Source: Rebecca billardiae RCC1528
Lineage: Eukaryota > Protista > Haptophyta
DNA length: 64,000 nt
Assembly: GCA_965240325.2 (NCBI GenBank)
Contig: OZ251243.1
Span: 372,001 to 436,000, forward strand
Reading direction: 5' to 3'
Made by a program: the position numbers and the translations under genes. This document shows, in pieces, positions 50,032 to 62,083 of the stretch. How positions within the stretch are numbered: the first letter of the stretch is position 1; each line of letters begins with the position of its first letter. The notes under the pieces are model-generated. The model had not been told where the DNA came from, did no database searches, and saw only the letters and a list, made by a program, of their open reading frames with translations.

Positions 50032-53209
<3,178 letters not shown>

Positions 53210-53347
53210 TCACTGATGACTTCAGACTGTTTGGTGATGCCTGATCAAGAGACCGGTCACTGGCCATCGGGCCAGTCCACGGGTGGCGGCTTGGCGAGCG
53301 GGGACGAGCAGGAACGACGAGCCGACCTGGATTGAAAAGCCCAAACG

Positions 53348-56267
53348 ATGGATGCACGCGGCGCGGCACGCGGGCACCCCGGTCGGGCCCCGCGCGGCGG
53401 CGGGCGCTGGGGCGGCGGCGGCGGCCGCGGCTGGCGCGGCGGCGGCGCCCACGGCGGCGCACCCGCCCGCGGGCGCGGCCGCGGCGGCTCGTACCACCCG
53501 CCCGCGCACCAACACCACAAGCGCCCGCTGCCCGCGCCCGCGGCAGGCTCGTCGCATCGGCAGTGGAAGCGCGTGCGAACGGAGGAGACGGTCGCGCTGC
53601 CCGTCGCCGAGCACCGCGGCGCGATCGTCGAGGCGGTGCGCACCTCGCGCGTCGTCGTCATCTCCGGCGACACGGGCTGCGGCAAGTCCACGCAGGTGCC
53701 GCAGTATCTGCTGGATGCGGAGCCGGCCGCTTTGATCGCGTGCACGCAGCCGCGGCGCATCGCGGCGAAGACGCTCGCGCAGCGCGTGGCGCGCGAGCGG
53801 TGCACGCCGGTGGGGCACGAGATCGGCTACGCCATCTCGCGCGAGCACGCCGCCAAGCGCGGCACCACGCGCTGCACCTTCCTCACCGTCGGCCTACTGC
53901 TGCAGATGCTGATCTTTGACCGCAAGCGCCGGAGCGCGCCGCCGCAGCCGCCGCCGCCGCAGCAGCCGGCAGCGGCGGGCGCGGAGGAGGCGGCCGGCCC
54001 GAGCGGCGCGTGCGCCGAGGAGGACGCCGAGCTGCGCGGCGGGCTGCCGTACACGCACATCGTCGTGGACGAGGCGCACGAGCGGGACATCGACATCGAC
54101 CTCTTGCTGCTGTTGCTGCGCAGGCTCGTGCATCGCGCGGCCGCGGCCAGCGGGGAGGCGGAGGAGGGGGACGAGGAGGAGGGGGTCGAGGCCGACGGCG
54201 CCGAAGCCGAGCGCGCCGACGCGCCGATGCCGGACGCCGACGGCGCCGCGGCCGGCGCGCCCGCGGCCGGCGCGCCCGCGGCCGGCGCGCCCGCGGCCGC
54301 GCGCCCGCGGCGGCGCGGCTTGACAGTCGTGATCATGTCGGCGACGATCAACGTGCAGAAGCTGGTCGAGTACTTCTCCACGCCGCCGCCGCAGAGCGGT
54401 GCGCGCGAGGGGGGCCGTCGGCTCGTCTCCTCCACGCCGCTGCCGCGCCGCGCGCGCGCGCGCGCCGCGAGCTGACGGCCCGTGTCGCGCGCCGCCCCCG
54501 CCGCGCGCGCCGCCCGCCCGCACGCCCCGCCGAGCAGCGATCGACGCCGTGACGGGCGAGACGGTCCCGCTGCAGCTCAGCCCGCTCCCCGTGCCGCAGC
54601 TCGCCGTGGGCGCGCGGCTGCACCCCGTGACGGGTGCGCGCCACGACGAGGCTCCGCGCCCGCGGCGGTGGGGCGGGTGTGCCCGTTTCGCGCCCTTTTT
54701 TTCTTCTCCTTTTTCAATTCTCGCCCCGGTGTTGTGCTGGTGCGGCGAGGTTCCGCGCCCGCGGCGGTGGGGGGGGGGGGCGCCGTTTCGCGCCCTTTTT
54801 TTTCTCCTTTTTCAATTCTCGCCCCCCGGTGTTGTGCTGGTGCGGCGAGGCTCCGCGCCCGCGGCGGTGTGGCCGGCCGCGGCGCCGAGTGCGCGACGCG
54901 CCTCACCGCACAGCCGCGGCGGCGCCCCTCCCCCGGCCGCACCCGCAACACATCCCCGCGTGGCGGGCGCGCAACAGTCACCTACTTAGACGAGCTTGCC
55001 GCCGCGCTGCCGCCCGAGCAGCGCGAGATTGCATCTCGCGAGTGCAAGGCCGCCACAGCACCGCTCGCCGCCGCGCTCGCCGCGTCGTCCGCGGGCGGCG
55101 GCGCGGGCTCGGGCGGCGGCGGCGGCGGCGGCGCGCCGAGCGCGCGCGGCGTGCGGCTGAGCCCGCAGCTCATTGCGCTCGCCGCGCACGTGGTCGGCCG
55201 CCTGCCTCAGATCGTGGCACAACTGCACGGTGGCGGCGCAGCGGGCGAGGGCGGCGGCGGCGACGGCGCGGCGGGCGAGGGCGGCGGCGGCGGCGGCGCG
55301 GAGGGCGAGGGCGGCGGCGGCGGCGCGGCGTCCTCCGCCCGCGGCGCGGCGCTGCCGCCGGCCGGCGCGGCCGCTCTTGTCTTCATGCCCGGTGTGGCCG
55401 AGATCGCCGAGCTCACCAAAGCCCTCGCGGCGCTGCCGGCGGAGGCGGGCGCGGCTCTGCGCGTGCTACCGTTACATTCATTGCTGGACTCAGCGGAGCA
55501 GGCGCGCGCGCGCGCCCGCCCGCGCGCGCGAGGTGGTCTGCGCCGCACACCGCGCGCGCGCGCGCGACCACGCTTCGCACCTCGGGCGCGCACACACGCG
55601 CGCATCGCCCCGCCGCTCTGCAGCCCGCCGCCCCGCCGCCACACACACGGGAGCGAGCACGCGGCACGCGCGCGCACGCCACAGCACCCCAGCACTGACA
55701 CCGGCCCCCAAGCGCACCCGCCGCGCGCGCGCGCCGCCTGTCCGATGGCGCGTGTGCCTGCGCCTGCCCCGCTCTCGGCCCCGCGCCCCAGGAGCGCGTG
55801 TTCGAGACCGTGCCGCCCGGCGTGCGCAAGGTTGTGCTCACGACCAACATCGGCGAGTCTTCCATCACCATTCCCGACGTCGGTTACGTGGTCGACCTCG
55901 GGCTCGAGAAACTGCCGCATTTCAACGCGGGATCCAACATGGAAGCCATGCTGCTCTCGAGGTCGAGCAAGGCGAGCGCACGGCAGGTGCGCGCGGCGGA
56001 GGGCGAGGGGGCCCCGGCGCGCGGGCAGCGCGCGCTGGCGCGGCGGGCGCGGGCGCGGCACTCAGCCGAGAGCGCGCGCGCGCGCGCGCTCGCTCGCACC
56101 GCGCGCGCGCGCAGCGCGCGGGCCGCTGCGGCCGCGTGGGGCCGGGGGTGGCCATGCGGCTGTACCCGCGCGCGCTCGTCGAGGGCATGCCCGGCGCGGG
56201 CGGCGGCGCGGACGCGGGCGGCGGCCGCGCCGGCGGCGGCGCCGCCGAGTACGGCGCAGCGGCGGCA

Positions 56268-56311
<44 letters not shown>

Positions 56312-58150
56312 GCATCAGGCTGGGCTCACGGCCGCTGGCCTGCTGCGTGACTTCACGCTGCCCGAGATGCAGCGCACCTCGCTGCTCAACCTCGTCCTCA
56401 AGGTGCGGCGCACGCGCACGCACACGCGCACGCATGCACGCACACGCACATGCGCGCACACGCACACGCACATGCGCGCACACACACACGCACGCGCACA
56501 CACGCACGCACACGCACACACGCACATACACACGCACACACACGCAGGCGACCGGCCGACCGCCCCACCGGGCGGCCCGGCGGCCGCGCGGCCGGCCGGC
56601 TGGCGCCCCCACGGCGCGACGGCCCTTTGGCACCTGCCATGCCCCGCCCGCCCCTCCGCCCAAAGCGAATCCTTCAACACACTCATCAAGCAATAATGCC
56701 GCCCGCGCCGCGCCGCGCCGCGCCGCGCGCGCCGCGCCGCGCCGCGCGCGCCGCCTGGCTGGCAGGTCAAGCTGATGCAACCCGGCGCGGCCGCGGGCTC
56801 GGTGCTGCGCGAGGCGCTGGAGCCGCCCGACGTCTCCGCCGTCACCGCCGCCACCGCCGAGCTCGTCAGCATCGGCGCGCTCACGGCGGGCGGGCGGCAC
56901 GCGACGCGGTGCGCGCCGCGAGCGCGCGCGCGCGCCGCGGCCGCGCGCGCGCCGCGGCCGCGCGCGCGCTGAGCAGCCGCGCGCCACACGCCCGCGCGGC
57001 CGGCGCGCGCGCGCGGCGCGCAGGCTGGGCGCGCTGGTGGCGCCGCTGCCCTGCTCCGCGCCCGTGGGCCGGCTGTGCGTGCTCGGCGAGGCGCTCGGCG
57101 TGGGCAAGGCCGCCGCTGTGCTCTGCGCCGCGCTCTCTCTCCCCGACGTTTTCGTGCAGCCGTTCCTCGCGCCGCCGCCGCCAGGCCAGCACCACGCGGA
57201 CGGCGCGGGCGCCGCCGCGGCCGCTGAGTATCGCTTCGCGTGTGACGACGTGCTCGCGTTCAAGAAGCGGCTCGAGCTGTTCCACGCCACAGGTGCGCGC
57301 GCTGGTGTGTGTGTGCGTGCGTGCGTGCGTGTGTGTGCGGCGAGCGAGCGACGGGGTCGCGCCCCGACGCCCCTCAGGCGGCTGCTGCCCCCTCCCCGAC
57401 CGCCGCCGCCTCTCACGCGCCGCGCGGTCCGCTCCGCGCGCGCGCGCTCGCTTCTCTATTTTTCCTCATTTTTCATCTCCTCATTCCGATGGACGCGCCG
57501 CCCAGGCTCCTCCGACCCGCTCTGCACGCTGGCTGTCCACCGTGAGTGGCAGCGGCAGCTGCAGGGCTCGGGCCCGGCGGGGGCGGCGCGGTACGCGCGG
57601 CTGATGCACTGCTCGTACAAGCGGCTGGTCGAGGTGCGGCGCACAGCCACAACCACAACCCGAACCCGAACCTAGGCGGTCGGTCAGGGGGTGGGGAGGA
57701 GGCAGGGCGAGCTGCGCGGCGCACGCTCCCGCGCAGCTCGCCCGCGCGGCGCCGCGGAGGCGCGGGTGCTGCGTGCGCACGCGCGCTCGCGCGCGCGCAG
57801 CCCGCGGCGCCGCTCACACCGCGCGCCCGCACGCCCCGTGCACGCGCGCGCTGCCCCCACGCCAATGCGCCGCTGCACGCGCCGCCGCCCGCGCCGCAGC
57901 TCGACTGTCTCGCGCGCGAGCTCGGGCAGCGGCTTGGCGCGCAGCGCCGCGCGCTGTCACTGCCCGCGCCGCCCGGCGCGGCCGGCGGCGCCGACAGCGA
58001 CCCTCTGGTGATGGTTGCTCTGTTGTGCGCAGCCTTCAGCCCGTCGTTTGCGCAGGCGGAGGCGTGGGATGGGGGCGCGGCGGACGGCGGCGCGGCCGCC
58101 GAGGCGGCGCGCGCCGCCGCGTGCACCGTGCGCTTCAGCGCCGTGAGCAC

Positions 58151-58208
<58 letters not shown>

Positions 58209-60195
58209 AGTGGCACGCCGAGCGCCGCCGCGGCCGCCGCCGCAGCTGCCGCCGCCGCCGCCGCCGCCGAGGGTGGCCTGGCTGCCGCCGCCGCCGCCGC
58301 CGGTGCCGGCGGTGCCGGCGGTCTCTCAGAGGTTGTGACGGAGGCCGTGGTGCGCCGCGCGCTCGAGCCGTGTGGACCCATCGCCGAGGTCGGGCTCGGC
58401 GGCGCCGACGCGGCCGCGCCGCCGCCCAACCAGCCCGGCGGCGCGGCGGACGGCGGCGCGGCCGCGGGCTCGGCGGACGGCGGCGGCGGCGGCGGTCTGC
58501 GCGTGCGCGTGCGCTTTGCCCTGCCGCTCGGCGCGCAGCTCGCGCTGCGGATGCTCGGGCTGAAGGGCCAGCTGCCACTGCTCGCGCTCCCGCCGAGCGC
58601 GCCGGGCTCGGCCGCCGCGCTCGGCCGCGCGGCCGCGCAGCCACAGGCGGAGGCCGAGCGCGCGCGCGCGCCCGCGCCGGCCGGCGGCGGCGCGGCCGGC
58701 GGCGGCGGCGGGCGCGGCGGCGGCGGCGAGCGCGCCGCCTCCGCCGGCACCGCGGTCGGCGCGCCGCCCGCGCTGCTTCTCGAGCCGTGGCACGCGCCGC
58801 TCCTCCGATTCCAGCGCGCAGCCGTCGCCGCGTCCAACCCCGCGCACGTGGTCGAACCTTACTGGCAGTCAGGCGCGTGCAACTTGGCGGATCAGCTCCG
58901 GCCGGCCGGCGCGGCGGCCAAGGCGGCGGCCGCGGCCGCAGCCACGGCGGGTGCGGTGCCAGAGCACGCGGCGGGGAGCGGCGGCTCGGCCGAGCCGCCC
59001 GCGCGCGGCGGGCGGCACCGGTACCTGCTCGCGGCCGCGTTCTCCCACGCGGGCCTCTCCCGGCACAAGCACCTCGCGCAGGCGCCGACGCTTCTGCCCG
59101 CCGCGCCGCCGATGGCGGCCGAGCTACTCATGTGCGGAGCTCGGCGCGCGCGCGCGCGCGGACGCGCGCGGCGGGTCTCGCGTGCACGCGCGCGCGCGGA
59201 CGCGCGCGCGCGCGGAGGGCGCGGCGCGCGCGCCCCGCGCGAGCTCGGCGCGCGCGTGCGCCGCCGCCCGCCGGCGCGCGCCACGCTGAGCGCAAGGCGC
59301 GCCACTGCCGCCCGCCTCGCCCTCCGCGCCGCCCCCCGCCCCCGCCCCGCGCGCAGGCTGACGTTCTCACGAAGGGTCCTCCTGGTCCCGAACCGCGCGC
59401 GCACTCGCGTCGTGTGCGCGTGGCTCGGCAGCGGCGACGACGGGCAGGGAGTGCCGCTGTGGCGCGAGGTGTGCGCCGCCGCGCGAGCTCGCGGCCGCGC
59501 GGCGCGGCGCGGCGGCCCTTGCGCGCCGACCGGCCGCGCGACCAAGCCCCCGCTCCGTCCGCTCTCACATCGCTCGCCGCGCCGCGCAACAACGCCCTGG
59601 CCCCGCGCGCCACGCGCGCACGCGCGCATACACACCCGTGCGCGCTGCCCGCACGCACGCCCGCACACACGCGCGCCTGCGCGCTGCCCGTCGGCTGGGC
59701 GCTGCGCTTATATCTCTTTACAATGTGTATCTCTTTGTTTTGGTGCAGCTGAGCGCCGCGGACGTTGAGGAGCTCAACTCGCTGCGCGCGGCCATCAGCG
59801 CGGCGGTGGGCAGTGGGCCGGTGCAGCCGGCGGCGGCCGAGGCGGCGGGCACACCAGCCGCCGCAGCCGCCGCCGCAGCCGCAGCCGCGCCCGCCGCCGC
59901 GACCACGGCCGCCGCCGCGCCGCCGTCGGCGGTGCTGCCGCCGGCGAGCGTGCAGCGCCGGCTGCTGCAGCTGCTCGGCAAGCGGCGCGCGCCCGCGCCC
60001 GCCGCCGACCTCGAGCAGGCGGCCGAGGCGGTGGCGAAGGCGCTCGAGGCGGTGAAGGCGGGCGGCGACGGCGCGCGCGCGCTCGACGCCGAGCGCGCCG
60101 ACGCGCTGCTGCGCGGCGCCGACGGCGTGCTGCTGCCGCCCGTGCCCTCGCCGCTGTACGACTACTCGCCCGAGGAGATGGACGGCTTCCGCTGA
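53348..60195 (+). CDS. DEAH-box RNA helicase, TDRD9/Spindle-E-like; 11 exons (introns 54399-54537, 54634-54977, 55502-55791, 55987-56114, 56403-56765, 56909-57023, 57293-57505, 57634-57899, 59132-59356, 59469-59748)
   Basis: [59 protein letters not shown] and HA2 region. All ten inferred splices keep the frame. Confidence 0.9.
54648..54872. repeat. ~100-bp tandem repeat (about 2.2 units) in helicase intron 2
   Basis: GAGG(C/T)TCCGCGCCCGCGGCGGTG...TTTTCAATTCTCGCCCC.GGTGTTGTGCTGGTGCGGC; units start near 54648, 54747 and 54847. Confidence 0.85.
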
Positions 60196-60479
60196 GCGTG
60201 GGCTGCCGATAGGCATAGCGCGCTTGATTCGCTCGTGACGACTGGGCTGACGCACTGACGTGTCGCGGGCCTCGGCATCACGCTGCATGCACGGCGGGCC
60301 GCCCGCACTCTAATCTCTATCTCTTCCGCGAGACGGTCAGACGACAGTAGACTGACCCGGCTCGCCGCCCGGTCCGCTCCCCGGCACCGGCGCAAGTCAC
60401 AATATATATATATATATGACTCTGACGCCTGCCCGTTCAGCATACCACGTCGTTAATATATATATATCAGATATATATA

Positions 60480-62083
60480 GGACCGCGTTCCGCGGTCCTT
60501 TTCCGTAGAACGAACGTAGTTCAGGGCCCGCGGTGGCGGTGCACCCTCCGTCGCAGTCGTCTATTGACAGACCAGTTGCATATGCCCGTACAACTAGACT
60601 CCAGCGGCGCGCCGCCGCCCGCCGCGCCGGGCGGGCCCATTGCAGCCGCCGGCGCGGCGCCGATTGTGTACAGGCGGATGCGACGAGGCGTGATCGACGC
60701 ATGAGCGCGACTCCACGTGCACACCAGGCCACGCGGAGCTGACAGCCAGGGAGCACGGTGCGGGGCCGCGGATTCGTTCGGGCCGCTGCTGCTGACCGCT
60801 GTCCCCGGGGTCACCCCCCGCGCCGGCAGCGCCCGGGATGATGCACTGGTCCGAGTAGGGTTCGACCAGCGCCTGCGCGACGGCCGACAGGCGGGCGCGA
60901 GGCGTGATCGACGCATGAGCGCAACTCTACGTGCACGCCAGGCCACGCGGAGCTGACAGCCCGAGGGAGCACGGTGCCGAGGTGCGAGGGCACCGGTGAT
61001 CCGGTTCGCGCACTCGCCGCGCGTGCACGGGCAGCTGACACACCTCGATCAGGCTCGGCACGCGTTGCAGAGGCACGGCCAGCTCTGGGGACGTCACGCA
61101 CCACCGTCGCCCGCGCAGCTCGTCCTCCTCGTAGAGTACCGTTCAGTTCCGAGGCGTAGCCCTCGCTCAGAGTCGACCGACGATGGACTTGGATCGTCGG
61201 CGCGCCTGCTCTCTCTCAATCAAGAAGACTGAAGAGTTCTGGGAGACCCCGGAAAGGCATGGCAAGGGCGGCGCGTGGTGAAGTCGAAGGCTCAGAGATC
61301 GATCAGTCCGGCATCAGGCGCCGCTGCCCCCGAGCTTGCGAGAGCCCGAACACAGGGCGGCGGCTGCGGCGCCGGCTCGCGGACGCGCCGGGGCCGCGCA
61401 AGGCCGCGCCGAGGCATCGACAGGGCGGCAGGGGCGGCGGGGGCGCGCGGAGTGAGCGGGGGCACGACGAACGCGATGTCGACGGCAGTCGGGACCCGCC
61501 GCAGCCGCGCGCTCCAGGCGCCATTCGCCGCGCGCACCTGCCCATCGCCGTCCTCACCCGTCGGTCGCTCGTGAGCCTCGTGCCCGTGGCTCGCCTCCAA
61601 ACGCGGGCCGCCTCTGGTGGGCCGCCGCCCGGGGCCGCGCGCGCGCCCAACCAAGTCCGTTCGCGTCAGATAGTATTGAGATATACGCCGAGCTTGGGCC
61701 CTCTGCTACTGACCCTTGCCTTGTCGGCTCCTGATACAGATAGGGCGCGATTGAATAGTTGATCAACTGATTCAAGGGACGTATGCATTGTCACATCGGT
61801 TCGCGGCAATCTCACTATCAAACTAAATCGCTCGTAACGAACCGTTACGTTAAAGTCACGGCCGCTCACGTCCCGTCCATCGATTGAATAGGGGAATGTC
61901 GTGGACGCGGTTATTTCTCCGTAATGCATGTGTAGAGAGGGTCTCAAAAATCGAAACTCGGTCACCGCCAGCCCTAAAAATCGCCCCCCGTCCCTTTTTT
62001 CTTGATCAAAGATCTTTTTGAAACGTGGTTAGGGCCCACGGAGCGGGCTCCACGCTGCGCGTTCCGCCCTGCACCGCGGGCCA
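60480..62083 (-). mobile_element. Non-autonomous Helitron2/Helentron-like element, copy 2
   Basis: Hairpin GGACCGCG-TTC-CGCGGTCC at 60480-60498 abutting (TA)n. Asymmetric IR at 60525-60535 and 62072-62082. Colinear with 1-1650. Confidence 0.7.

What the first reader, a model, noticed from the sequence alone, without database searches (positions are those of the whole stretch)
53348..60195. Tudor-less TDRD9/Spindle-E-like helicase in an alga: candidate component of an ancient small-RNA transposon-silencing pathway
Seen: the spliced protein has a full DEAH core. Beyond the core it matches, in the same order, segments I recall as specific to animal TDRD9/Spn-E rather than DHX36/DHX57. These are [16 protein letters not shown]; [24 protein letters not shown]; an RRM-like insert ([35 protein letters not shown]); and a C-terminal block [44 protein letters not shown]. 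Only low-complexity Ala/Gly sequence occupies the position of the Tudor domain. Known: TDRD9/Spn-E acts in piRNA transposon silencing, and ciliates use a related helicase (Ema1). Inference: this lineage keeps an ortholog that works without Tudor/methyl-arginine docking. Its N-terminus is RGG-like.
Basis: partly seen in the sequence, partly recalled or inferred. Interest (0 to 1): 0.78.

Follow-up and report, generated by a model that had tools for sequence, protein, structure and literature searches.

The report
Tudor-less Spindle-E-like helicase in a haptophyte
This alga carries an intact gene for an RNA helicase whose closest relatives are the animal transposon-silencing helicase TDRD9/Spindle-E but which lacks the Tudor domain, so that helicase's scaffold appears to be older than animals.

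Summary
Window 53348-60195 (+) carries an intact 11-exon gene (4,485 coding nt, 1,494 codons; GC3 0.86-1.0; nine GT donors of the GTGCG/GTGTG type and one GC donor). It encodes a DExH-box helicase with the core motifs, an RGG-rich N-terminus and long Ala/Gly inserts. A Pavlovales protein (56% identical) is colinear with exons 1-7.

- **Tree.** In a 47-row ML tree of core+HA2, the gene's clade (haptophytes, Aureococcus, Picozoa, Thecamonas) joins Tudor-bearing TDRD9/Spindle-E at 100/100. An AU test rejects union with the DHX57/29/36/9/YTHDC2-type group (p 3e-5).
- **Profile.** The post-ratchet module matches TDRD9's post-Tudor block (Prob 93%, E 2e-7) but none of five control families (Prob 10% or less).
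- **Structure.** A model of a relative's module has Bombyx Spindle-E (9NHS) as the best of 48,161 chains (Z 9.7).

The insert folds as an RRM (Z 9.4, 1.7 A). There is no Tudor domain; a 59-residue Ala/Gly linker sits at that position. Two of the four cited motifs are generic DEAH features.

A small-RNA role is inference only, and no RNA run was listed. One paper calls Tdrd9 a metazoan innovation, so a pre-animal Tudor-less clade is a modest novelty. The exons were never joined.

The parts
53348..60195 (+). Whole coding region of the helicase gene: 11 exons, 1,494 codons plus stop
   Evidence: The frame closes at 4,485 nt and GC3 is 0.86-1.0 in all exons.
53348..54398 (+). Exon 1: RGG N-terminus and RecA1 (motifs I, Ia, II, III), with an acidic/Ala-rich insert between II and III
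   Evidence: It is 56% identical to Pavlovales P0001 over residues 22-348.
53372..53488 (+). RGG/RG-rich low-complexity N-terminal tail
   Evidence: RG- or KG-rich tails also occur in P0001, P0161 and P0159.
53666..53692 (+). Motif I (Walker A), GDTGCGKST
54068..54079 (+). Motif II, DEAH
54538..54633 (+). Exon 2: strand leading to the ...RLHPV motif
   Evidence: Colinear with P0001.
54978..55501 (+). Exon 3: start of RecA2 with a Gly-rich insert; motif IV LVFMPG. It is followed by a GC-AG intron.
55792..55986 (+). Exon 4: RecA2, motif [10 protein letters not shown]
   Evidence: Pfam Helicase_C; PDB hits
56115..56402 (+). Exon 5: motif VI RAGRCGR, a Gly-rich insert, and the start of the winged helix ([14 protein letters not shown])
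56766..56908 (+). Exon 6: winged-helix part of HA2
   Evidence: P0001 colinear
57024..57292 (+). Exon 7: ratchet-like HA2_C
   Evidence: Pfam HA2_C E 0.0036. The best PDB hit is Spindle-E, but only at E 0.02.
57506..57633 (+). Exon 8: end of the ratchet (SSDPL...YKRLVE)
57900..59131 (+). Exon 9: connector helix (LLCAAFSPS), RRM-fold domain, Ala/Gly linker, and the first part of the TDRD9-type C-terminal block
58122..58589 (+). RRM-fold domain with two long Gly/Ala loops
   Evidence: Model of exon 9: all 50 best chains are RRMs. The best is TbRGG2 RRM, Z 9.4, rmsd 1.7 A over 71 residues. The relative P0159 gives the same result. The protein-language-model lead also pointed to RRM. No Pfam RRM hit.
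58596..58772 (+). 59-residue Ala/Gly/Arg low-complexity linker at the place where TDRD9/Spindle-E carries its Tudor domain
   Evidence: No Tudor by Pfam.
58773..59131 (+). C-terminal block, part 1 ([35 protein letters not shown]...AAELL). It is homologous to the post-Tudor block of TDRD9.
   Evidence: hhalign Prob 93-94%, E 2e-7; hmmsearch specificity
59357..59468 (+). Exon 10: C-terminal block, part 2 ([12 protein letters not shown]...VPLWRE)
59749..60195 (+). Exon 11: end of the C-terminal block ([17 protein letters not shown], matching the ..DDI..IN.LR motif of TDRD9), an Ala/Pro-rich tail, and the stop codon

Best explanation
**Shown.** An intact 11-exon nuclear gene of a Pavlovales-like haptophyte encodes a DExH-box (DEAH/RHA-type) RNA helicase of about 1,494 residues. 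It belongs to a eukaryote-wide clade whose only studied members are animal TDRD9/Spindle-E.

All ATPase/helicase motifs are intact. The domain order is:
1. RGG tail.
2. RecA1 and RecA2.
3. Winged helix and ratchet.
4. Connector helix (AAFSPS).
5. RRM-fold domain.
6. Short Ala/Gly linker.
7. A beta-rich C-terminal block with helices, of the kind found after the Tudor domain of TDRD9.

Animals carry an extended Tudor domain where this protein has only the linker.

**Inferred.**
- Like other DExH helicases, it most likely loads on single-stranded RNA and translocates 3'->5' with ATP, so as to strip or remodel RNA-protein complexes.
- Since it lacks a Tudor reader of methyl-arginine, it must find its substrates through its own RGG tail and RRM-fold domain.
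- By homology with Spindle-E, which sits on a PIWI-piRNA-target complex in 9NHS, the most specific guess is that it remodels Argonaute/PIWI-bound target RNAs in a small-RNA pathway.

I put clade membership at about 0.85 and the small-RNA role at about 0.35.
For: **Gene model**
- Junctions, frame and GC3.
- Orthologue colinearity.

**Motifs**
-.

**Phylogeny**
- Quick trees on two alignments and a careful tree all give the joint clade with TDRD9 at 100 support.
- The AU test rejects the alternative.
- Composition cannot explain the grouping: the family is GC/Ala-rich while the TDRD9 rows are mostly insect proteins.

**C-terminal module**
- hhalign against TDRD9: Prob 93.8%, E 1.7e-7 and Prob 92.7%, E 4.4e-7.
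- Against DHX57, plant DHX29-like, DHX36-like, R3H/YTHDC2-like and DHX34-like: Prob 10% or less.
- An HMM of the family's module hits only TDRD9/Spindle-E among 426 fetched helicases, and the reverse search is equally specific.
- The AGLYPN-type connector lies about 165 residues from the C-terminus in the controls, but 350-420 in this family and about 700 in TDRD9.

**Structure**
- Spindle-E 9nhs_G is the top hit: Z 9.7, 261 residues, chain 735-1374.
- The insert has an RRM fold.

**PDB sequence search**
- For the relative P0159, the best solved chain is Spindle-E, by a narrow margin.

**Pathway context**
- E. huxleyi is reported to have AGO/PIWI-domain proteins, RDR, HEN1, Armitage-like and Tudor-SN genes (PMC4839659).
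Against: - **Thin representation of the window.** In the tree the window itself is only exon 1 (29% of columns) plus its Pavlovales orthologue, because the exons were not joined.
- **Sampling.** TDRD9 is represented mostly by insects and unnamed metagenomic proteins. No named DHX30, vertebrate TDRD9 or Ema1 was in the set.
- **Branch lengths.** Both groups have long branches.
- **Non-discriminating sequence scores.** Plain scores do not separate families: P0159 scores 223.8 bits against Spindle-E and 219.8 against DHX29. A word-index search with P0001 put DHX57/DHX29 names first and no TDRD9 in the top 120.
- **RRM segment.** Taken alone, it shows no significant profile match to the equivalent TDRD9 segment (E 0.15).
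- **Model quality.** The models are of modest confidence: mean pLDDT 60 and 45, from 8-10 aligned sequences.
- **Structural match.** The Spindle-E hit has rmsd 10 A.
- **Function.** There is no expression data and no functional data for any Tudor-less member. Earlier notes on this genome record no Argonaute/Piwi, which means only that none has been noted.
Confidence: 0.78

Rival explanations
1. Same protein and same clade, but with a housekeeping role. It would be a general RNP-remodelling helicase (mRNA, rRNA or stress-granule metabolism) with no tie to small RNAs. On this view, the link of TDRD9 to PIWI arose only when animals inserted the Tudor domain.
For: - The Tudor domain, which couples TDRD9 to methylated PIWI proteins, is absent.
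- RGG tails and RRM folds are typical of general RNA-binding proteins.
- The family occurs in very different protists.
- The gene lies head to head with the housekeeping gene CDC48.
- One paper treats Tdrd9 as a metazoan innovation (PMC5381599).
Against: - The only members of the joint clade with known function act in PIWI pathways.
- In the 9NHS complex Spindle-E sits on SIWI-piRNA-target RNA together with GTSF1 and Maelstrom, as described in the legend quoted. Which Spindle-E domain makes the contact was not examined here.
- Haptophytes are reported to have Argonaute/PIWI-domain genes.
Confidence: 0.45
2. It is an ordinary DHX57/DHX29/DHX36-type (RHA-like) helicase that has diverged fast in a GC-rich genome. 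On this view, its grouping with TDRD9 is long-branch attraction and the C-terminal match is a chance or generic OB-fold similarity.
For: - DHX57/DHX29 names lead the word-index search.
- PDB scores for Spindle-E, DHX29 and DHX9 are within 5 bits of each other.
- Both clades have long branches, and several rows fail the composition test.
- The models are of low confidence.
Against: - Support is 100/100 in the careful tree under a site-heterogeneous model, and the AU test gives p 3.3e-5.
- The C-terminal block matches TDRD9 only, not five control families.
- No OB_NTP_bind, UBA, RWD, dsRBD or R3H domain is found in any family member.
- The connector motif lies far from the C-terminus, as in TDRD9.
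- Spindle-E ranks first of 48,161 chains.
- The composition of the two groups is opposite, so it cannot pull them together.
Confidence: 0.08
3. The long Ala/Gly tracts are unrecognised in-frame introns or assembly artefacts. The real protein would then be much shorter, and the 'linker at the Tudor position' would not be part of it.
For: - No RNA reads were available.
- The tracts are simple triplet repeats at DNA level.
- Relatives are 1,136-1,229 residues long against 1,494 here.
Against: - GC3 stays at 0.87-0.95 across the exons that hold the tracts.
- The tracts lack the GTGCG donor / CAG acceptor signature of the ten real introns.
- Relatives have shorter low-complexity inserts at the same positions.
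- Removing the tracts would change neither the domain order nor the absence of a Tudor domain.
Confidence: 0.1

Closest known systems
TDRD9 / Spindle-E (animal piRNA-pathway DExH helicase; solved in PDB 9NHS with SIWI, piRNA, target RNA, GTSF1 and Maelstrom)
   Same: - DExH core with all motifs, and an HA2 ratchet.
- Joint clade at 100/100.
- Connector helix far from the C-terminus.
- A domain after the connector at the same position, with an RRM fold in the models of this family.
- A homologous C-terminal block.
- Best structural match.
- No Pfam OB_NTP_bind hit in either group.
   Different: - There is no Tudor domain; a 59-residue Ala/Gly linker stands in its place.
- The N-terminus is an RGG tail.
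- Long low-complexity inserts sit in RecA1, RecA2 and the RRM loops.
- No C-terminal Cys/His pair like the one nearly invariant in the TDRD9 alignment was seen by eye in the window's translated C-terminus. This was not tested further.
- The family is a sister clade, not nested among the animal sequences.
- Its function is untested.
DHX57 / DHX29 / plant DExH1-DExH7 and DHX36-type RHA-like helicases
   Same: DExH core, HA2, an AGLYPN-type connector, and similar raw sequence scores.
   Different: - These have a compact OB_NTP_bind domain about 165 residues from the C-terminus, and UBA/RWD or dsRBD modules.
- The window's family has none of these.
- The AU test rejects union of the two groups.
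- Profile match of the C-terminal module is Prob 10% or less.
YTHDC2 (the name given to the Chrysochromulina tobinii family member)
   Same: Both are DExH helicases of the RHA-like group.
   Different: - No family member has R3H, ankyrin or YTH domains.
- R3H-bearing helicases fall in the other half of the tree.
- The public name is not supported.
Ema1p (Tetrahymena DExD/H helicase acting with the PIWI protein Twi1p)
   Same: It is a protist helicase that promotes pairing between PIWI-bound small RNAs and nascent transcripts (PMC5200911). This is the kind of role proposed here.
   Different: The papers read place it only in the DExD/H family.

Membership tests
TDRD9/Spindle-E | DExH-box helicase core with intact motifs I-VI | tested here: met
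   [36 protein letters not shown] and QRAGRCGR are all present. PDB hits to DEAH helicases reach E 1e-24 for exon 1.
TDRD9/Spindle-E | HA2 winged-helix and ratchet after RecA2 | tested here: met
   Pfam HA2_C in exon 7 is weak (E 0.0036). It is clearer in the relatives P0161, P0151 and P0006.
TDRD9/Spindle-E | Groups with TDRD9 rather than other DExH subfamilies in a tree of the core | tested here: met
   Joint clade 100/100, and the same clade in two quick trees. AU test p 3.3e-5 against the DHX57/29/36/9/R3H group. The window is represented by exon 1 and its Pavlovales orthologue only.
TDRD9/Spindle-E | TDRD9-type C-terminal block after the ratchet | tested here: met
   hhalign Prob 93-94%, E 2e-7 to 4e-7, with controls at 10% or less. 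Reciprocal hmmsearch is specific. Spindle-E is the top structural hit, Z 9.7.
TDRD9/Spindle-E | Extended Tudor domain between the post-connector domain and the C-terminal block | tested here: not met
   No Tudor hit in any exon or any family member, while TDRD9 rows give Tudor at E 1e-12 to 1e-18. The interval is a 59-residue Ala/Gly linker (58596-58772).
TDRD9/Spindle-E | Acts with PIWI proteins in piRNA biogenesis or transposon silencing | not testable with these tools
   No RNA run was listed, and the earlier notes on this genome mention no Argonaute/Piwi.
DHX57/DHX29/DHX36 (RHA-like with OB_NTP_bind) | Compact OB_NTP_bind domain close to the C-terminus, plus UBA/RWD or dsRBD modules | tested here: not met
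   No such Pfam hits. The connector lies 350-420 residues from the end, against about 165 in these families. hhalign Prob 10% or less.
YTHDC2 | R3H, ankyrin insert and YTH domain | tested here: not met
   None is found in the window's exons or in family members.
RRM (RNA recognition motif) fold | beta-alpha-beta-beta-alpha-beta fold | tested here: met
   Window exon 9 model: E76-82, H148-154, E161-167, E200-206, H209-222, E225-229. The 50 best chains are all RRMs, Z 9.4-7.1. The relative's model gives the same result. Confidence in this domain of the window's model is modest (10-residue block means of pLDDT 39-74).
RRM (RNA recognition motif) fold | Canonical RNP1/RNP2 aromatic motifs and a Pfam RRM_1 match | tested here: inconclusive
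   No Pfam RRM hit. By eye, the strands CTVRFSAV and LRVRVRF have one Phe each and no classical RNP1 octamer. RNA binding was not tested.

The most novel reading that the evidence does not exclude
The TDRD9/Spindle-E helicase scaffold (DExH core, RRM-fold domain, special C-terminal block) would date back to early eukaryotes and would already have served Argonaute/PIWI-guided silencing. In haptophytes the methyl-arginine link would run the other way round: the helicase carries the RG/RGG tail and is read in trans by a Tudor protein such as Tudor-SN. Animals would later have built the Tudor reader into the helicase itself. This would make a protist PIWI/Argonaute-helicase module directly testable, and would overturn the view of Tdrd9 as an animal invention.
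Probability: 0.15. Interest if true: 0.8.

Novelty: new variant of a known kind. Interest (0 to 1): 0.58.

Why it matters
TDRD9/Spindle-E is a core factor of animal germline transposon defence. A comparative study lists Tdrd9 among metazoan innovations (PMC5381599).

The results here suggest that only the Tudor insertion is new in animals. The helicase, with its unusual post-ratchet module, has Tudor-less relatives in haptophytes, a pelagophyte, Picozoa and an apusomonad. An Entamoeba helicase also falls in the joint clade by its core, though the C-module HMMs did not hit it.

This has three consequences:
- It gives a dated order of events for how a piRNA factor was assembled.
- It corrects several public names ('ythdc2-like', 'hrpA').
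- It offers a concrete candidate for small-RNA or RNP-remodelling studies in ecologically important algae, where the silencing machinery is barely known.

If the protein proves to be a general RNA helicase, it still shows what TDRD9 was recruited from.

Tried and rejected
- **Pfam exon by exon.** Only weak Helicase_C and HA2_C hits, of no use for subfamily assignment.
- **PDB sequence searches of single exons.** Exons 1 and 4 hit all DEAH helicases alike. Exons 5, 9 and 11 hit only Gly/Ala linkers of engineered proteins. These were rejected as evidence either way.
- **RNA evidence.** No run was listed.
- **Word-index search with the C-module of P0159.** It found only five family members and no TDRD9. 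This reflects a limit of sensitivity, not absence of kinship.
- **First tree attempt.** It timed out in MAFFT. I then cut the proteins to the core around motif I.
- **hhalign of the RRM segment alone.** Not significant (E 0.15), so homology of that domain with TDRD9's rests on position and on the structural alignment only.
- **Foldseek on the whole C-module and the ESM-Atlas shape search.** Both gave only weak RRM rows. Spindle-E appeared only with the exhaustive aligner.
- **P0160, an MMETSP transcript.** It shares 97 N-terminal residues with P0001 and then turns into a different helicase. I treated it as a chimera and left it out.
- **Literature.** I found no statement on the subfamily of Ema1p and no report of a TDRD9-like gene in haptophytes.
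- **Pseudogene reading.** Considered and rejected: the frame is intact, GC3 is high and the splice sites are regular.
- **Antisense ORFs.** The long ORFs on the opposite strand (for example 59128-60288, minus strand) are by-products of about 80% GC.

Full report
**What is there.** The region is about 75-84% G+C. Three-frame translation and inspection of every boundary on the DNA give an 11-exon gene on the + strand:

| Exon | Coordinates |
|---|---|
| 1 | 53348-54398 |
| 2 | 54538-54633 |
| 3 | 54978-55501 |
| 4 | 55792-55986 |
| 5 | 56115-56402 |
| 6 | 56766-56908 |
| 7 | 57024-57292 |
| 8 | 57506-57633 |
| 9 | 57900-59131 |
| 10 | 59357-59468 |
| 11 | 59749-60195 |

The exons sum to 4,485 nt, which is 1,494 codons plus stop. 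In every exon GC3 is 0.86-1.00 and GC2 only 0.43-0.71. Nine introns start with GTGCG or GTGTG, one starts with GC (55502), and all end in AG. No RNA run was listed for the stretch, so the model rests on sequence and on relatives.

**Relatives and the organism.** An exhaustive HMMER search with exon 1 gave one outstanding hit, P0001. This is KAJ1625897.1 of Pavlovales sp. CCMP2436, a partial protein of 826 residues and 56% identical. It runs colinearly through exons 1-7 and across all their junctions. The window therefore comes from a Pavlovales-like haptophyte, in line with earlier scan notes that call this genome haptophyte-like.

Further searches brought full-length family members:
- P0159 (1,201 residues, marine metagenomes)
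- P0279 (Chrysochromulina tobinii, named 'ythdc2-like')
- P0277, P0278 and P0280
- P0161 (its cluster includes Aureococcus anophagefferens 'helicase' and 'hrpA')
- P0151/P0006 (Picozoa)

They align with exons 7-11 across the remaining junctions. None has a Tudor, OB_NTP_bind, UBA, RWD, dsRBD, R3H or YTH hit in Pfam.

**Which DExH subfamily.** Raw scores do not decide this. Exons 1 and 4 hit all DEAH helicases in the PDB about equally. Exon 7 has Spindle-E as its best hit, but only at E 0.02. Full-length P0159 scores 223.8 bits against Spindle-E (9nhs_G), 219.8 against DHX29 and 219.5 against DHX9. A word-index search with P0001 lists DHX57/DHX29-type names first.

I therefore built trees of the core plus HA2, cut around motif I. 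The window was represented by exon 1 and by its Pavlovales orthologue, because the operators' rule forbids joining exons. Reference families were identified by Pfam architecture and source names. A quick tree of 71 rows, a quick tree of 47 rows on an L-INS-i alignment and the careful tree (LG+C20+F+G4 PMSF, 642 columns) agree:
- The family plus Thecamonas trahens AMSG_02901 forms a clade (99/96).
- Its sister is a clade of Tudor-bearing TDRD9/Spindle-E plus two Tudor-less proteins, one from Entamoeba marina (97/93).
- The joint clade has 100/100 support.
- It is separate from DHX57, DHX29, plant DExH, DHX36-like, dsRBD-bearing DHX9-like, R3H/YTHDC2-like, DHX34-like, Prp-type and HrpA helicases.

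An AU test rejects holding the family with the 16 DHX57/29/36/9/R3H-type rows (delta lnL 59.7, p 3.3e-5). Compositional attraction is unlikely, because the family is Ala/Gly/Arg-rich and the TDRD9 rows are mostly insect proteins. Long-branch attraction cannot be fully excluded from the tree alone.

**The post-ratchet module.** This evidence is independent of the tree.

*Position of the connector.* In DHX57, DHX29-like, DHX36-like and R3H helicases the AGLYPN-type connector lies about 165 residues from the C-terminus. It lies about 700 residues away in TDRD9 and 350-420 in the family.

*Shared order of elements.* Alignments of the family (A1) and of TDRD9 (A2, A4) show the same sequence of elements:
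1. Connector.
2. A domain starting with a short strand (CTVRF / NTVYL) and a helix ending in a conserved Cys.
3. In TDRD9 only, the Tudor domain.
4. A block with ..E.NW.S / ..E.NSVNS, then RYLLA / ERLLVAA, then TLLP / TLMP, and finally ..EIN.LR / ..IN.LR.

*Profile comparison.* Profile-profile comparison gives Prob 93.8%, E 1.7e-7 for the block. An independent local rebuild gives 92.7%, E 4.4e-7. The same family profile scores Prob 10% or less against five control families, and there it matches only the connector motif. The first half gives Prob 96%, E 3e-9, but that alignment includes the generic ratchet end.

The reverse HMM hits only TDRD9-clade proteins and then family members. The RRM segment taken alone is not significant (E 0.15).

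**Structure.** AlphaFold2 on the module of P0159 with 8 aligned sequences gave mean pLDDT 60, but 75-89 in two folded parts.
- Foldseek found only weak RRM matches.
- The exhaustive aligner put Spindle-E 9nhs_G first of 48,161 chains (Z 9.7, 261 residues aligned, model 38-421 on chain 735-1374, rmsd 10 A). That range spans both sides of the Tudor domain.
- RRM domains followed, matched to model residues about 78-183 (TbRGG2 RRM, Z 8.6, 1.8 A over 71 residues).
- The window's own exon 9 gave a poor model overall (mean pLDDT 44.6) because of its Gly/Ala loops. It still showed the beta-alpha-beta-beta-alpha-beta elements, in 10-residue blocks with mean pLDDT between 39 and 74. Its 50 best chains are all RRMs (Z 9.4-7.1; TbRGG2 RRM 1.7 A over 71 residues).
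- A protein-language-model lead and the Atlas shape search also point to RRM.

Canonical RNP motifs and a Pfam RRM match are lacking.

**The Tudor position.** In the window, the interval between the end of the RRM fold (58589) and the first conserved motif of the block (58773) is a 59-residue Ala/Gly/Arg linker (58596-58772). In P0159 the corresponding gap is about 60 residues. In TDRD9 it is about 250 residues and holds the Tudor domain (Pfam 892-1009 in P0096). No Tudor is detectable in any exon or any family member. By the defining feature in its name, the protein is therefore not a TDRD9. It belongs to the helicase clade from which TDRD9 comes.

**How it most likely works.**
- *Shown:* an intact DExH ATPase/helicase core, a ratchet, an RRM-fold domain, a TDRD9-type C-terminal block and an RGG tail.
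- *Inferred from the DEAH/RHA family in general:* ATP-driven 3'->5' translocation on single-stranded RNA that remodels RNPs.
- *Inferred from the nearest studied relatives:* action on Argonaute/PIWI-bound target RNA. Spindle-E is seen on a SIWI-piRNA-target-GTSF1-Maelstrom complex in 9NHS (legend quoted). E. huxleyi is reported to encode AGO/PIWI-domain, RDR, HEN1, Armitage-like and Tudor-SN proteins, but no Spindle-E/TDRD9 homologue is mentioned (PMC4839659).

Without a Tudor domain, recruitment would have to go through the RGG tail and the RRM fold. I rate clade membership at about 0.85, a small-RNA role at about 0.35, and a general RNP role at about 0.45.

**Novelty.** A comparative study lists Tdrd9 among metazoan innovations (PMC5381599). 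I found no paper describing Tudor-less relatives in protists. The claim that ciliate Ema1 is related could not be tested, because no sequence was at hand and the papers read place it only in the DExD/H family. I file the finding as a new variant of a known kind.

**Limits.**
- The exons were never joined, so no search, fold or tree used the whole protein.
- TDRD9 sampling is insect-heavy, and no named DHX30 or vertebrate TDRD9 was included.
- The structural models are shallow.
- There is no expression or functional evidence.

Noticed in passing
window 51290-53191 (- strand): A CDC48/p97-type AAA ATPase gene lies head to head with the helicase gene. Its long ORF reads through GC-rich introns. 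Depending on which Met is the true CDC48 start, the two start codons are only about 150-380 bp apart, which suggests a shared bidirectional promoter.
   Followed up: no
window 54647-54873 (intron 2): A 100-bp unit is repeated 2.3 times in tandem (90% matches), with a T-rich core in an otherwise GC-rich intron.
   Followed up: no
window 56404-56546 (intron 5): A (CACGCA)n / 22-bp microsatellite starts right at the donor site. In frame it reads as a His/Thr/Arg-rich extension, which could mislead ORF-based gene callers.
   Followed up: no
window 55502-55791 (intron 3): This is the only one of the ten introns with a GC donor (GCGCGC...CAG). The others start GTGCG or GTGTG.
   Followed up: partly
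P0160 (MMETSP transcript; not in the window): Its first 97 residues are identical to the Pavlovales orthologue P0001. It then continues as a different, unrelated DExH helicase of 1,327 residues, so it is probably a chimeric transcript assembly.
   Followed up: partly
P0279, P0401, P0205 (public records): Several source names look wrong. The Chrysochromulina family member is called 'ythdc2-like' and an Aureococcus fragment 'hrpA'. An Oryza DHX29/57-like protein is called 'spindle-E', although it falls far from TDRD9 in the tree.
   Followed up: partly
P0151 (Picozoa homologue), N-terminus: Instead of an RGG tail, the Picozoa protein has a Cys-x-Cys-x-Cys-x-His stretch that looks like a CCCH zinc finger before the helicase core. 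The N-terminal RNA-binding module therefore seems interchangeable within the family.
   Followed up: no
window 59128-60288 (- strand) and many others in 53000-60500: ORFs of 200-650 codons occur on the opposite strand and in off frames. They are by-products of about 80% G+C and should not be taken for genes.
   Followed up: no
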